Origin: Gracilinanus agilis
Lineage: Eukaryota
Assembly: GCF_016433145.1 (NCBI RefSeq)
Contig: NC_058131.1
Span: 686,962,992 to 687,023,266 of the forward strand
Length of the DNA: 60,275 bases
Direction of reading: 5' to 3'
Positions 2,990 to 58,980 of this stretch are shown in pieces. Under the pieces are notes generated by a model. The model was not told the DNA's origin and ran no database searches. It saw only the letters and a list, made by a program, of their open reading frames with translations. Numbering within the stretch: position 1 is the first letter of the stretch; each line of letters starts with the position of its first letter. A program made the position numbers and the translations under genes.

Positions 2990-3180
2990 AAAAAAAACCT
3001 TCCCTTCCATCTTAGAATCAATACTGTGCATTGGTTCTAAGTCAGAAGAGTGGTAAGAGGTAGGCAATGGGGTTAAGTGACTTGCCCAGGGTTACACAGC
3101 TAGGAAGTGTCAGGCTAGATTTGAACCCAGGACCTCCCATCTCTGGGCTTGGCTCTCAATCCACTGAGCAACCCTGCTCC
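2990..3180 (-). mobile_element. SINE-1 (opossum CORE-SINE)
   Basis: Diagnostic tail CTTAGAATCAATACTGTG and core GTTAAGTGACTTGCCCAGGG. Confidence 0.9.
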
Positions 3181-16878: not shown

Positions 16879-17063
16879 TTTTTTTTAAACCCTTGTACTT
16901 CGGTGTATTTTCTCATAGGTGGAAGATTGGTAAGGGTGGGCAATGGGGGTCAAGTGACTTGCCCAGGGTCACACAGCTGGGAAGTGGCTGAGGCCGGGTT
17001 TGAACCTAGGACCTCCTGTCTCTAGGCCTGACCCTCACTCCACTGAGCCACCCAGCTGCCCCC
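16879..17063 (-). mobile_element. Young SINE-1 (CORE-SINE) with 14-bp TSD
   Basis: Full length with retained CpGs. TSD TATCTAATATTTCT at 16865-16878 and 17064-17077. Confidence 0.95.
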
Positions 17064-17179
17064 TATCTAATATTTCTATACCAATTCAATTACTCTGACC
17101 CAGATAAACTCCTTGGGAGGTACTTTCGTACCACAACATTAGAGCATAGGAAAAATTTGCACAAAAATGAGCTTCAGCT

Positions 17180-25049: not shown

Positions 25050-25054
<5 letters not shown>
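24396..25054 (+). mobile_element. Probable solo ERV LTR
   Basis: Starts TGTGAAGATGGG, has LTR-like composition, AATAAA at about 24965 and an opossum-LTR-like 3' end (CAGCAACCACA...AATTTTTAACA). No TSD is resolved and the ends are uncertain. Confidence 0.65.

Positions 25055-25084
<30 letters not shown>
25052..25084. repeat. (CA)n microsatellite
   Basis: Read directly. Confidence 0.97.
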
Positions 25085-25087
<3 letters not shown>

Positions 25088-26485
25088 TTACTGTTGAAGG
25101 GTTCTCCAGTGGTAAATAGTGAGAATATTGGTCTTTGAATCAGCAGAAAAGGCCAGAATCCTAAATTACCCATGAAATGTGTGTGTATGTGTGTGTGCGT
25201 GTGTGCGCATATGTGATTGTCATGTACACATGCCTCCGATTCTGATTCTCTTTCTCTTTTACAGGAATTCATTTCTCTCAGTTCCTGGATTTCCCATCAG
25301 ACAGAGGGCAGGTATGATAAAGTTTTCTTAGTATGTATTTCTCCCTCTTTGTAAATGCTTTGTGCCAGTTTGGCTAGGATGATTTCACATAGAAACAATG
25401 ATAAAGTCTCATGTTTTGTATCACATGATAAGCTATATTGTTGTACCTTATGAAAATTAGGCACAATGAAAATCAAAGCCCTGTCCATGATCATAACAAA
25501 ACTTTCAGGTATCAGTATTGTTCTACCTCACCCTAAGCATTATTAATTTATCTCCTTTCAAGGGGAAGGATGCGAAGACCAATTCTAGATTGATTTAGGA
25601 TTTGGGATGATGGTTCTGACTGGCCATCTACATTTTTTTTCCTTTGGTGTTTCTTTTTCACATTACTTAAGCTTTTTTTTTCTCCCTCTAACCTTAATCT
25701 TCTGAAGAAAAATAAAAGTCTTATAAAAACATGCATATTCAAGCAAAAAAGATTCCCACATTGGCTATGTCCTAAACTGTGTATCTTAGTCTGCATGTTA
25801 GGTTTATTATATCTTTGTCTAATACTGTGTAACTTCATCATCAGTCCTTTGGCACCATGGCTTGTCATTGCATTAATAAGTTCTGAAGTCTTTGAAAAAA
25901 TATTTTTGTTTTCAATATTATTGCAATTGCAAAAAGTGTTCTCCTAGTTCTTTTCACTTTACCCTGCATCATTTCATGAAAGTCTTTCCATTTTCCTCTG
26001 AAACCCAACTTTGTCCTTTCTTAAAGCAAAATATTCCATTCCATTCATAATATGTTCAGCAATTCACTAATTGATAGACTCCATTTTAGTTTCCAGTTCT
26101 CTTACAATACAAAAAGAGAAGCTAAAAATATTCCAGTACAGCTTGAACTCTTTGGGATATAAACTTGTAGGTTGTATTGCTGGGGCAAAGGGTATGAAGT
26201 ATAGTATCTTTTCGAGCATAATTACAAGTATTAAAGTTTCCAGATTTAATAGATCAAATCACAGTTCTATCAATAGTGACTCAATGTGCCTATTTTTCTG
26301 GAACTCAGAAAACATTTGTCATTTTCCTTTTTTTTTCAACTTTGCCAATGTGACCAGTATAGAATGGTACCTCAAAATTGTTTTAATTTATACTTTTCTA
26401 ATGAGAGGCTATTTAGAGTAGTTTTATATGACAGTAAAAACAAATATATGTCTACTGTTGTAAACTGATTTTTTATCTTGGGCGT

Positions 26486-26887
26486 TGTAAGGATGAAGGG
26501 TAAGGAAAAATAATTTTGGGGGGAGAGAATGTTGCACAACAGAAGCGTAAGACAAGAACGGCAGTTGGAGACAGTAAAGGATTCCTGCAGAAGGAGTTTT
26601 TGGTTTGCAGAGCGGACCCCCAAATCTCCCCAGCCTCACCCTTGCCTTACTTGAGAGACCTTTTTAACATATTCATATTTTAGTATATAGACTAAAATTA
26701 GAGATAGAGGGAAGGGAAGGAGAAGCTTTGGGTTGGAGACTGAATTGGTTCTCCAAATTGAAGGACCTTTCCTCAGTAATCCTTCCTAGAATTCTTCACT
26801 GTCTCCAACTGTCATTCTTGTCTCACGCTCCTCTTGTGCAACATTCTCTCCCACCAAAATTCTTTTTCCTTACCCTTCATCCTTACA
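26486..26887. mobile_element. Unclassified 402-bp fold-back element with 99-bp TIRs and TGT...ACA ends, inserted in an old L1
   Basis: 26486-26584 and 26789-26887 are ungapped inverted repeats with 9 mismatches in 99 bp. The flanks GCGT (26482-26485) and ACAT (26888-26891) are a probable diverged 4-bp TSD. The host L1 sequence rejoins across the site. Confidence 0.8.
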
Positions 26888-27149
26888 ACATTTATCAATT
26901 AGGGTGTGGTTCTCATTTCTATAAATTTGAATCAGTTACACATATATTAGAAATTATACATTTTTCAGAGAACCTGGGTGTAAAGGTTCCCCCCCCCATC
27001 TGATTAACTGTATGCCTTCTAAACTTAGTAGGATGTTTTGCATGACTTCAGATGTATAATTCATGTTTGTTGCTTTCTCAAGGAGTACAGGAGGGTTAGG
27101 AGGGAGAGAATTTGGAACTCAAAATTTTTAAAAATGAATGCTAATTTTT

Positions 27150-27327
27150 TTAAACCCTTGTACTTTCGTGTATTTTCTCATAGGTGGAAGAGTGGTAAGG
27201 GTGGGCAATGGGGGTCAAGTGACTTGCCCAGGGTCACACAGCTGGAAGTGGCTGAGGCCAGGTTTGAACCTAGGACCTCCTGTCTCTAGGCCTGACTCTC
27301 ACTCCACTGAGCTACCCAGCTGTCCCC
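27150..27327 (-). mobile_element. Young SINE-1 (same subfamily) with 15-bp TSD
   Basis: About 8 differences from the 16879 copy. TSD TGAATGCTAATTTTT at 27135-27149 and 27328-27342. Confidence 0.95.
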
Positions 27328-28259
27328 TGAATGCTAATTTTTGATGAAATTTATAAATATCTAATGAAATAAGTAAAATGTATTTAAACTTAGTTGTATT
27401 GTATTTGTTTCTGCAAAACTTCTTTTCTCGAATTTGTGAAATCGAAATTGTACATGTTTTCTTCTATGATCCTTTCTTTTTTGTTTGTTCATGAACCTCT
27501 ACTGATTCCAAAGGTAATTTCTTCTTCTTCCTATTCATTTTTAAAAGATGACCTCCTATATTTGTGTCAATTTAAAGTTTATTTTGGCATCAGTGTGAGG
27601 TTTTGGTCTAGACATATTTTTTCCAGACCTCTAAGTTTTTGCAGCTATTTTTTTAAATTTATTTTTACCAAATGTTGTGCCTTTACTCCAGTAAATGGAG
27701 TCTTTGAATTTATTGAATGCTAGGCTAGTAGGTTTGTGTCTCAGTGTTGTGTATTTCTCTGTTCCACTCATCAACCTTTGTGTTTTATTAAATCAGTATC
27801 AAATCATTTTAATGAATGCTGTTTTGTATAATAATTTAAAGATCTGGAACTACTTGACCCTATTTCTTACCATTTTTTATTTCCATTGATACTCTTAGCC
27901 TTTTGTTCCTCCAGATGTTTTTTCCCTCTATTTTTATAAAGTAATACTCAGGCAGTTTTCTTTGTTGTTTATTGATGAAATCTTCAGTGTAATCATGAAT
28001 AAGAAGTTTGGCATCCAAGTTGACATTTGACTATTCAATTTTCTATTCCAGGGCCTTTACTTCCATTGTCTGAAAAGGCTACTGCTCATCAATGCAGCAA
28101 TGCAATAAATCTCTATTACCTTCATGTAATGGTTCCTTCTATATTTCCATTATCCTTCCTTAGTAATGATTGGCTTGTTGAGTCCAAACTACTTGGAGTC
28201 TTGACAATTTTATAGGGGTGTTCACTATATAACCAAGGTGATAATGATGAACACAAGAA

Positions 28260-28560
28260 GGTTAAGGTTGAGAGAGGGAAAATGGGTAGGAATGTAGAAG
28301 AGTGAAAGACAGAAGGAGAAGAAAGGGACGAAGGAAGGCAAGGGAGAGAGTAAGGGGAGGGAGAGAGTAAGGAGAAAGAGTGTAAAAAGGAGACTTAAGG
28401 ATAAAGAAGGAGAAGGAGGAAGAAGAGGAAGAGGAAAAAGAAGAGACAGAGACAGAGAGAGAGCTGAGGAGAGAGGGAAGGAGGGAAGGAAGGAAGGAAG
28501 GAAGGAAGGAAGGAAGGAAGGAAGGAAGGAAGGAAGGAAGGAAGGAAGGGGAAAAAGAAA
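28260..28560. repeat. Purine-rich tract with (GGAA)n (about 28487-28547)
   Basis: Read directly. Confidence 0.95.
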
Positions 28561-29069
28561 GACATTTGACTGGGATTTTGAAGAAGTAAAGAGATGATGA
28601 GGTGATTCCACATCAGGCATGGTTGACTACTGAAGTTCCTGTTGGTTCTGAGATTGTATGATTGTACAAGCCTAACAATGAATTTGTAAAGAAAGAGGAA
28701 CAGAGAGGATAGGAAAATATGGGAAACATGTGTTGACTTCATGACTAATCAGTTCAAGGAATCAAGGCAAAAAGGATAGATCAGAGGCACGGAACCTGAC
28801 TACATATCAAAAGTTTAAGTCTGTATTTTTCCACATTCAGCACTGAGGGTCACAAGAATACTCTGAGGCTCAGGGACAAAAATCTCTAATTGGGTGTGAG
28901 AATGAGATATGCTCCCCCACCTCAGATTTCTGTGCCTAAGGCAAAGCTCCAAACGTCCCACACTCATTAAGGTTCTATATTCAGGCCCTCCACAATCCAT
29001 TTCAAGCCTAATTTTCTATCTCTATGTGTCACTAATTCCCCCACATACAGTCAGCCCAGCTGACTTGGG

Positions 29070-29072
<3 letters not shown>

Positions 29073-29132
<60 letters not shown>

Positions 29133-29137
29133 TCTCT
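29073..29137. repeat. (CT)n microsatellite
   Basis: Read directly. Confidence 0.97.
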
Positions 29138-30066
29138 CGTACCATGTATACTCTCACCTTTGAATGACTGATTATAAGATTATAGATTTATGCATTCTAA
29201 AAGGCATACTATAGTATCTGCTCTGACTCCTTCATTTCAGAGATAAAGAAAATGAGAACTAAATAATTTGTCAAACTTGCCCAAGATCATACTGAGAGAA
29301 CTGGAACTCCAGCCCCTTACAATTCTGTTCAAATTATTTTTGTAGTTTTTCACACGACAAGAATGTATTTCCTCTTCTTTTCAATTATCCCATGAAAAAA
29401 GAAAAACAATATTCATGCCTAAAATTTGCTTTTCCCTCTGCAATATTTATCTTTCCTTTAAGTTCCATCTTCTCTGACTTTCCTTTCTCAATCACCACTT
29501 TTGAGTGATCACACTTTTTTTTTTGAAAGCAAACACTCATTATCTTTATCACTCTTTTGGCACTTACCCTTAACTACCCATAATGGTAATTATCTTGTTT
29601 TTATATGCATGGGCTTTCTGTTTTCCCAGATGGAAAGGACCTCAGCATCATTCTAACACAATCTGTTAATTCTACAATTAAGGAAACTGTGGTCCATGGC
29701 TGTGAAATGAATTCCTAGTTAGTAGCAAAGTCAAGACTAGAACCCAAGTCTCCTTGTTTCTAATCTACTGATATTTTCATCAGAGCAGCTAGGTGGTGGT
29801 ATAATTAAAGTGCTAGACTTGGGACTAGAAAGTTCTGACTTTGAATCCTACCTCAGATTATTTTGGCTTTGTGACCTGAGCAAGTCATTTACTCCCTCTC
29901 TTTAGCGTCTTCCAGGATTGTTATGAGGATCATCTAAGACAGTACATGTAAAATGCTTTCATACCTTAAAACGCTATGAACACACTCATCATTATCATTC
30001 TTATTCTATTCTGCCCACTTTCTTATACCAGAGAAATGCAAGGTATCTTGTGCTTCCCCTTCTTAC

Positions 30067-57029: not shown

Positions 57030-57220
57030 CCCCCTTACTTTCTATCTTAGAATTAATACTGTATATTGGTTATAAGGGAGAAAAGCAAGAAGGGCTAGAC
57101 ATTGGGGCTTAAGGGACTTACCCAGGGTCACAGAGCTGGGAAGTATCTGAGGCCAGATTTGTACCCAGGACCTCCCATTTCTAGGCAAGGCTCACAATCC
57201 ACTGAGATAGCCAGTTACCT
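57030..57220 (-). mobile_element. SINE-1 inserted in L2
   Basis: Tail CTTAGAATTAATACTG and core on the minus strand. Confidence 0.85.
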
Positions 57221-58784: not shown

Positions 58785-58980
58785 GGGACAGCTGGGTTGC
58801 TCAGTGGATAGAGCCAGGAGTAGATAGGAGGTCCTGGGTTTAAATCTGGCCTCAGACACTTCCTAGCTATGTGACCTTGGCCAAGTCACTTAACCCCCAT
58901 TGCCTGGCCTTCACCACTGTTCTTCTGTCTTAGAAACAAAACTCAGTATTGATTCTAAGATGGAAAACGTTTTAAAAAAT
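58785..58980 (+). mobile_element. SINE-1
   Basis: Full length, with a TSD-like CTGTATTA on both sides. Confidence 0.9.

What the first reader, a model, noticed from the sequence alone, without database searches (positions are those of the whole stretch)
26486..26887. Fold-back transposable element with TGT...ACA ends, 99-bp TIRs and a probable 4-bp TSD
Seen: two ungapped 99-bp inverted arms (90/99 identical) enclose a 204-bp core, and several CpGs are retained. Removing the element and one TSD copy restores the host L1 (TTGG-ACAT-TTATCAATT), implying a 4-bp duplication (GCGT/ACAT, two transitions apart). Known: the usual marsupial DNA transposons are hAT (8-bp TSD, short TIRs) and Tc1/mariner (TA TSD). 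TG...CA ends with 4-bp TSDs mark DDE integrases of LTR retroelements and Ginger-type DNA transposons. Inference: this may be a non-autonomous Ginger-like MITE, or an LTR-derived palindromic element moved by an integrase-type enzyme, from a family that may be unclassified or mislabelled as an LTR in opossum.
Basis: partly seen in the sequence, partly recalled or inferred. Interest (0 to 1): 0.75.

Follow-up and report, generated by a model that had tools for sequence, protein, structure and literature searches.

The report
Decayed foldback transposon-like insertion, family unproven
A 402-base stretch with two 99-base mirror-image ends is real and looks like an old non-coding jumping element sitting in older repeat DNA of an opossum-type genome. 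I could not show that it has other copies, or that it made the 4-base target duplication on which the "integrase-type" reading depends.

Summary
Arms 26486-26584 and 26789-26887 are ungapped inverted copies (90/99). With one further GT/AC pair they reach 101 nt (92/101) around a 204-bp core. Identity stops abruptly at all four edges, and chance cannot produce this.

The core is not palindromic, has no coding signal and has no poly(A) signal. The ends read TGTAA...TTACA. The element is richer in G+C (42.5% vs 36%) and in CpG (o/e 0.22 vs 0.08) than its surroundings.

The claimed 4-bp duplication is only GCGT vs ACAT, 2 of 4 identical, which is weak on its own. A rival flank reading exists: a gapped 14/17-nt direct repeat, anchored P about 0.014.

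No second copy could be found in the window or in any collection I could reach. Copy number, the TSD rule and an autonomous partner therefore remain untested. The target rules of Ginger1 (CCGG/CCGT) and Ginger2 (RTATAY) are not met.

Unchecked notes from the same scan report many TGT...ACA foldbacks with 4-bp TSDs in this genome, which raises the prior.

Best reading (about 0.55): one decayed copy of a non-autonomous TIR/foldback element. Rivals: an ERV-derived product, or a local inverted duplication.

The parts
26482..26485 (.). candidate left copy of a 4-bp target-site duplication (GCGT)
   Evidence: identical to the right candidate at 2 of 4 positions, and both differences are transitions. 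Its last two bases (GT) also extend the inverted repeat.
26486..26584 (+). left terminal inverted repeat, starts TGTAA
   Evidence: 90/99 (92/101 with the two outer bases) complementary to the right arm, ungapped.
26585..26788 (.). 204-bp core, non-coding and not palindromic
   Evidence: left half against the reverse complement of the right half gives z = 1.1; no Pfam family in any open frame; no AATAAA or ATTAAA on either strand.
26617..26650 (-). degenerate look-alike of the outer about 37 nt of the arm, inverted, inside the core
   Evidence: local alignment score 11 against 7.6 +/- 1.3 in shuffles (P about 0.03).
26702..26745 (+). degenerate look-alike of the outer about 40 nt of the arm, direct, inside the core
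   Evidence: score 14 against 7.7 +/- 1.3 in shuffles (P about 0.001 by mononucleotide shuffle). Purine-rich composition may inflate this.
26789..26887 (-). right terminal inverted repeat, ends TTACA
26888..26891 (.). candidate right copy of the 4-bp target-site duplication (ACAT)
26472..26485 (.). left member of an alternative, longer gapped flanking direct repeat
   Evidence: 13 of its 14 bases match 26891-26907, which carries 3 extra bases. Anchored at the element's edges, P is about 0.014 against random sites in this window; unanchored, P is 0.07-0.11.
26891..26907 (.). right member of that alternative flanking direct repeat

Best explanation
Window 26486-26887 is one decayed copy of a non-autonomous, non-coding transposable element of the foldback/MITE type: two 99-bp terminal inverted repeats around a 204-bp unique core, inserted into older A+T-rich repeat DNA. 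Shown here: the structure, the sharp edges, the TGTAA...TTACA termini, the lack of coding capacity and the compositional contrast with the flanks. Inferred: a DDE-type enzyme supplied in trans bound the identical ends, joined the 3'-CA ends to a staggered cut 4 bp apart, and repair produced a 4-bp duplication. That duplication has since decayed by two transitions (GCGT / ACAT; an original ACGT would need one change per copy and would also explain the two extra paired bases). The TG...CA plus 4-bp signature points to an integrase-like enzyme (retroviral/ERV1-type or Ginger-type), but this step is the least supported. If the arms were identical at insertion, their 9.6% divergence implies an insertion tens of millions of years old.
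For: A 99/101-nt ungapped inverted repeat with abrupt edges. Termini TGTAA...TTACA match the TGTNR rule, and the TIR length lies within the 40-270 bp reported for Ginger elements (PMC2836005). The core is not palindromic, so this is not a simple hairpin duplication of one sequence. No Pfam domain in any open frame. G+C is 42.5% against 36% and CpG o/e is 0.22 against 0.08 for the window (P = 0.07), as expected for DNA of different origin or age from its surroundings. Among lengths 2-10, a 4-bp duplication is the best flank match, and both of its mismatches are transitions. As leads only, unchecked: at least a dozen first-reader notes on this same genome describe TGT...ACA foldbacks of 115-329 bp with 4-bp TSDs. 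One has 101-bp arms (s1-180432). One was followed up as a family with thousands of copies (s1-153820).
Against: No second copy was found: none in the 60-kb window, and only chance bacterial hits in the public collections I could scan. These collections hold essentially no marsupial DNA, so this is absence of a test and not a negative result. The TSD is 2/4, which about one random site in four would give. TGT is reached only after trimming two paired bases from the maximal repeat, which weakens the terminal-motif argument. A competing gapped 14/17-nt flanking direct repeat has better statistics (P about 0.014). The flanks fit neither Ginger1 (CCGG/CCGT) nor Ginger2 (RTATAY) targets. No Ginger repeats are reported from mammals in the papers read (PMC5753468).
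Confidence: 0.55

Rival explanations
1. This is a local, non-mobile palindrome. A replication template switch or fold-back repair of a break copied about 100 bp in inverted orientation next to its source, leaving a spacer. It would be a single-copy rearrangement with no family and no transposase.
For: No other copy was found anywhere I could look. No intact TSD of any length. A gapped flanking direct repeat of 14/17 nt could be a scar of a replication-based rearrangement.
Against: In such an event one arm plus the spacer would be original host sequence. Yet the whole 402 bp, core included, is richer in G+C and CpG than both flanks. The ends fall on TGTAA/TTACA. By my recollection of L1 3' regions (not tested), the two flanks read as one continuous L1 segment, which leaves no room for an arm to be host sequence. 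Unchecked notes report many similar TGT...ACA elements in this genome.
Confidence: 0.2
2. This is an ERV-derived product and not a DNA transposon. It is either a solo LTR whose two ends happen to be long inverted repeats, or a by-product of reverse transcription that carries the same LTR end at both termini and was inserted by the ERV's own integrase (a 4-bp TSD is typical of ERV1/gamma-type integrases, from established knowledge).
For: TG...CA ends and a size of about 400 bp typical of an LTR. A 4-bp TSD is the best flank reading. An unchecked note (s1-176205) describes a 540-bp palindrome in the same genome made of head-to-head ERV R-U5/PBS/leader copies.
Against: No AATAAA or ATTAAA on either strand, and only one TATATA, at the exact centre. 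LTRs normally have inverted ends of a few bases up to about 20 bp, not 99 bp. A snap-back by-product should be palindromic throughout, but the 204-bp core is not. No ERV with related LTRs lies in the window.
Confidence: 0.15
3. This is a retroposed or otherwise captured hairpin sequence flanked by a long (14-20 bp) target duplication, as made by LINE-type target-primed reverse transcription or by filling of a widely staggered break.
For: The gapped direct repeat 26472-26485 / 26891-26907 abuts the element (anchored P about 0.014).
Against: There is no A-rich tail or T-rich head at either end and no TT/AAAA-type nick site. The repeat needs three inserted bases and is not significant without the anchoring (P 0.07-0.11). 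It was found post hoc. This L1 region is T-rich then G-rich and may resemble itself by composition.
Confidence: 0.05

Closest known systems
Ginger1 and Ginger2/TDD DNA transposons (Bao, Kapitonov and Jurka 2010, PMC2836005)
   Same: TGTNR...CA termini like LTR retrotransposons. Long TIRs (Ginger1 40-270 bp, Ginger2 50-180 bp). 4-bp TSDs. Non-autonomous derivatives are expected to look like this element.
   Different: Ginger1 inserts at CCGG or CCGT/ACGG, and Ginger2 in RTATAY. The candidate target here (GCGT/ACAT within TTGG..TTAT) fits neither. No transposase-bearing copy is known here. The papers read report only domesticated Gin-1 in opossum and no Ginger repeats in human.
ERV1-type LTRs and retroviral integrase products
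   Same: TG...CA ends, a probable 4-bp TSD, and a length of about 400 bp.
   Different: 99-bp inverted ends, no poly(A) signal and no recognisable U3-R-U5 layout.
Generic MITEs / foldback elements (for example hAT- or Tc1/mariner-derived MITEs of mammals)
   Same: Small size, TIRs, no coding capacity, strong hairpin potential.
   Different: There is no 8-bp (hAT), TA (Tc1/mariner) or TTAA (piggyBac) duplication at the edges. The TIRs are far longer than in the usual mammalian MITEs.
GingerRoot (PMC6839031)
   Same: Integrase-related transposase family with TIRs of 100-150 bp and termini that mimic those of LTR elements.
   Different: The TSD is 6 bp, rarely 7-8. The family is reported from a clubmoss, fish and invertebrates; the word 'mammal' does not occur in the paper.

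Membership tests
Ginger1 | 5' terminus TGTNR (and ...CA 3') | tested here: met
   The element reads TGTAA...TTACA at 26486 / 26887. The maximal inverted repeat starts two bases further out.
Ginger1 | TIRs of about 40-270 bp | tested here: met
   99-101 bp.
Ginger1 | 4-bp TSD | tested here: inconclusive
   GCGT vs ACAT, 2/4 identical and both differences transitions. About one random site in four gives 2/4 or better.
Ginger1 | target CCGG (75%) or CCGT/ACGG (24%) | tested here: not met
   Neither flank tetramer is CCGG, CCGT or ACGG; GCGT is one base off CCGT.
Ginger1 | autonomous copies encode a Gypsy-integrase-like transposase | not testable with these tools
   No marsupial genome collection was available. 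The window holds no such ORF.
Ginger2/TDD | 4-bp (or 5-bp) TSD inside an A+T-rich RTATAY target | tested here: not met
   The site reads TTGG-GCGT / ACAT-TTAT, with no RTATAY.
Solo LTR of an ERV | U3-R-U5 layout with promoter and poly(A) signal | tested here: not met
   No AATAAA or ATTAAA on either strand. An old copy could have lost it.
Solo LTR of an ERV | the same sequence flanks proviruses elsewhere | not testable with these tools
   No genome-wide search was possible.
MITE (generic) | TIRs, small size, no coding capacity | tested here: met
MITE (generic) | many copies with conserved ends and a constant TSD length | not testable with these tools
hAT / Tc1-mariner / piggyBac | 8-bp, TA or TTAA duplication at the edges | tested here: not met
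   8-bp flanks match at 1/8; there is no TA or TTAA at either boundary choice.

The most novel reading that the evidence does not exclude
The element is an older, larger member of an opossum-lineage group of non-autonomous elements moved by an integrase-type DDE enzyme (Ginger-like, or an ERV integrase acting on mini-substrates with identical LTR-like ends). That would be integrase-type 'cut/copy-and-paste' MITE activity in a mammal, which none of the papers I could search describes. The degenerate terminal-like motifs inside the core would then be remnants of a composite of two smaller foldback units that came to move by its outer ends.
Probability: 0.3. Interest if true: 0.7.

Novelty: new member of a known kind. 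Interest (0 to 1): 0.38.

Why it matters
Mammalian DNA-transposon catalogues are dominated by hAT, Tc1/mariner and piggyBac. According to the papers read here, integrase-type (Ginger-like) elements are known in mammals only as domesticated genes. If a marsupial carries families of TGT...ACA, 4-bp-TSD foldbacks, they point either to an unrecognised transposase source or to ERV integrases mobilising mini-elements. They would also be a source of long hairpin RNAs. This single decayed copy cannot settle that. Its value is as one more, older and larger data point for a class that needs a genome-wide census.

Tried and rejected
- **Other copies in the window:** blastn of the element against the window and a dedicated scan for TGT...ACA inverted pairs found only this element and microsatellite artefacts.
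- **Public DNA collections, exact TIR words:** Viral contigs gave 0 hits twice. Metagenome contigs gave one chance match in a sediment bacterial contig. Genome contigs gave two chance bacterial matches. None bears on the question, because these collections hold essentially no marsupial DNA.
- **Translation trick:** the word-based protein search found nothing with a 74-aa translation of the element or with the left-flank ORF. An exact look-up of eight ORFs found nothing. Non-genic eukaryotic ORFs are evidently not in that collection.
- **Sequencing runs:** Depth, joints and empty sites therefore could not be read.
- **Paralogous empty site:** no other copy of the flanking repeat in the window spans the site.
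- **Fully palindromic core:** rejected.
- **RNA and protein families:** Rfam gave only sub-threshold miRNA-like hits. Pfam gave nothing.
- **Literature:** five word searches and one sequence-string search found no description of such opossum elements. Gentles et al. 2007 is not held.
- **Earlier findings by sequence:** blank.

Full report
**What is there**

Reading the sequence and the repeat finder confirm two ungapped inverted arms, 26486-26584 and 26789-26887, 90/99 identical, around a 204-bp core (26585-26788). The repeat runs two bases further out on each side (GT on the left, AC on the right), giving 101 nt and 92/101. Beyond that, and inward of the arms, complementarity drops at once to chance level.

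No comparable inverted pair exists in the 60-kb window. The other listed pairs are microsatellite or purine/pyrimidine tracts. As single-stranded DNA the stretch folds at -116 kcal/mol, z = -14.9 against shuffles.

**Anatomy**

- The nine arm mismatches are six transitions and three transversions (K2P about 0.096).
- The core is not a decayed continuation of the palindrome. Its left half against the reverse complement of its right half scores no better than shuffles (z = 1.1).
- No open frame in or around the element matches a Pfam family.
- Neither strand carries AATAAA or ATTAAA.
- The element has 42.5% G+C and CpG o/e 0.22. The flanks have about 36% G+C and o/e 0.08-0.12, and the window as a whole has o/e 0.08. 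Four CpGs where 1.5 are expected at the window's rate gives P = 0.07. This is suggestive of DNA of different origin or age, but not significant.
- The outer 40-45 nt of the arm has degenerate look-alikes inside the core. One is direct, at 26702-26745 (P about 0.001 by mononucleotide shuffle). One is inverted, at 26617-26650 (P about 0.03). The order outer-left end, inner right-like end, 51-bp A+T-rich spacer, inner left-like end, outer-right end would fit a composite of two smaller foldback units. However, the purine-rich composition may inflate these scores, and the inner halves are not reverse complements of each other. I leave this unexplained.

**The edges and the claimed duplication**

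With the TGT...ACA boundaries the flanking tetramers are GCGT and ACAT: two identities and two transitions. For lengths 2 to 10 and for both boundary choices this is the best match, but no length gives an intact duplication. About one random site in four would give 2/4 or better.

An original ACGT target would need one change per copy and would also explain why the inverted repeat seems to extend by GT/AC. That is inference only.

There is a competing reading. Positions 26472-26485 and 26891-26907 form a gapped direct repeat: 13 of 14 bases match, with three extra bases on the right. When it is required to abut the element, it is matched or beaten at only 1.4% of random sites in this window. 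Without that anchoring the figure is 7-11%. I found it post hoc, and it needs indels.

From my recollection of L1 3' regions the flanks do look like one continuous L1 segment, and a 4-bp overlap aligns without gaps. That is memory, not a test. No paralogous L1 copy in the window covers the site.

**Search for relatives**

This is the decisive question, and I could not answer it.

- The window holds no second copy.
- Exact TIR words found nothing in viral contigs. They found only chance bacterial matches in metagenome and prokaryote genome collections.
- Translations of the element and of the left flank found nothing in the protein word search. Eight ORFs are not in the protein collection at all. 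That collection does not carry non-genic eukaryotic ORFs.
- Two sequencing runs hold words of the element, 0.79 and 0.05 of the sampled words. The 0.05 share in a second organism could be an ortholog or a relative about 9% diverged.

None of these blanks is evidence that the element is single-copy.

**Earlier notes of this scan (leads, not support)**

For this same genome there are at least a dozen first-reader notes on foldbacks of 115-329 bp with TGT...ACA ends and 4-bp TSDs.

- One has 101-bp arms (s1-180432).
- One was followed up as a family with thousands of copies that is absent from two related species (s1-153820).
- Another note describes a 540-bp palindrome of head-to-head ERV R-U5/PBS/leader copies (s1-176205).

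I could test none of them. They raise the prior that such a class exists here and that this element is an older, larger member of it.

**Comparison with known families**

- **Ginger.** The Ginger paper (PMC2836005) gives TGTNR termini for both groups. Ginger1 has TIRs of 40-270 bp and 4-bp TSDs at CCGG or CCGT/ACGG. Ginger2 has TIRs of 50-180 bp and 4-bp TSDs in RTATAY. This element meets the terminus and TIR-length criteria. It is inconclusive on TSD length and fails both target rules. A transposase-bearing copy could not be sought.
- **GingerRoot** makes 6-bp TSDs (PMC6839031).
- **Ginger in mammals.** Repbase's survey of human repeats finds Ginger only as domesticated genes (PMC5753468).
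- **LTR.** The element lacks a poly(A) signal and has inverted ends far longer than usual for an LTR.
- **hAT, Tc1/mariner and piggyBac** duplications are absent.
- **Literature.** No paper in the held library describes opossum TGT...ACA foldbacks. Gentles et al. 2007 is not held, and Dfam/Repbase could not be queried. 'Undescribed' here means undescribed only within what I could read.

**Verdict**

- The most likely reading (about 0.55) is a decayed copy of a non-autonomous TIR/foldback element inserted into an old L1-like repeat. It was probably joined by a DDE enzyme making a 4-bp stagger. The integrase-type identity of that enzyme is the weakest link.
- A local inverted duplication (0.2), an ERV-derived product (0.15) and a long-TSD capture (0.05) remain open.
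- On its own, this copy is an ordinary-looking repeat of moderate interest.
- The class it may belong to deserves a proper genome-wide census.

Noticed in passing
window 26617-26650 and 26702-26745: Degenerate look-alikes of the outer about 40 nt of the TIR lie inside the core, one inverted and one direct, on either side of a 51-bp A+T-rich spacer. This hints that the element is a composite of two smaller foldback units.
   Followed up: partly
window 26472-26485 and 26891-26907: A gapped 14/17-nt direct repeat abuts the element (anchored P about 0.014). It is an alternative to the 4-bp TSD reading, or it may be self-similarity of the host repeat.
   Followed up: partly
window 27145-27342 and 16880-17075 (also about 3045-3178, 58785-58922, 57090-57214): A SINE-like repeat lies 255 bp downstream of the element and has a 94%-identical copy 10 kb away, plus several 75-85% copies.
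   Followed up: no
window 25052-25220: An interrupted (CA)n/(TG)n microsatellite pair gives spurious miRNA-family and inverted-repeat hits.
   Followed up: no
window 28400-28620 and 29074-29138: A purine-rich GAAGG-type tract and a (CT)n tract about 600 bp apart account for most 'inverted repeats' listed for the window.
   Followed up: no
window, whole: There is no stop-free stretch above 133 aa and none that looks like a conserved protein. CpG o/e is 0.08 and G+C about 36%. The window is repeat-rich, gene-poor DNA.
   Followed up: partly
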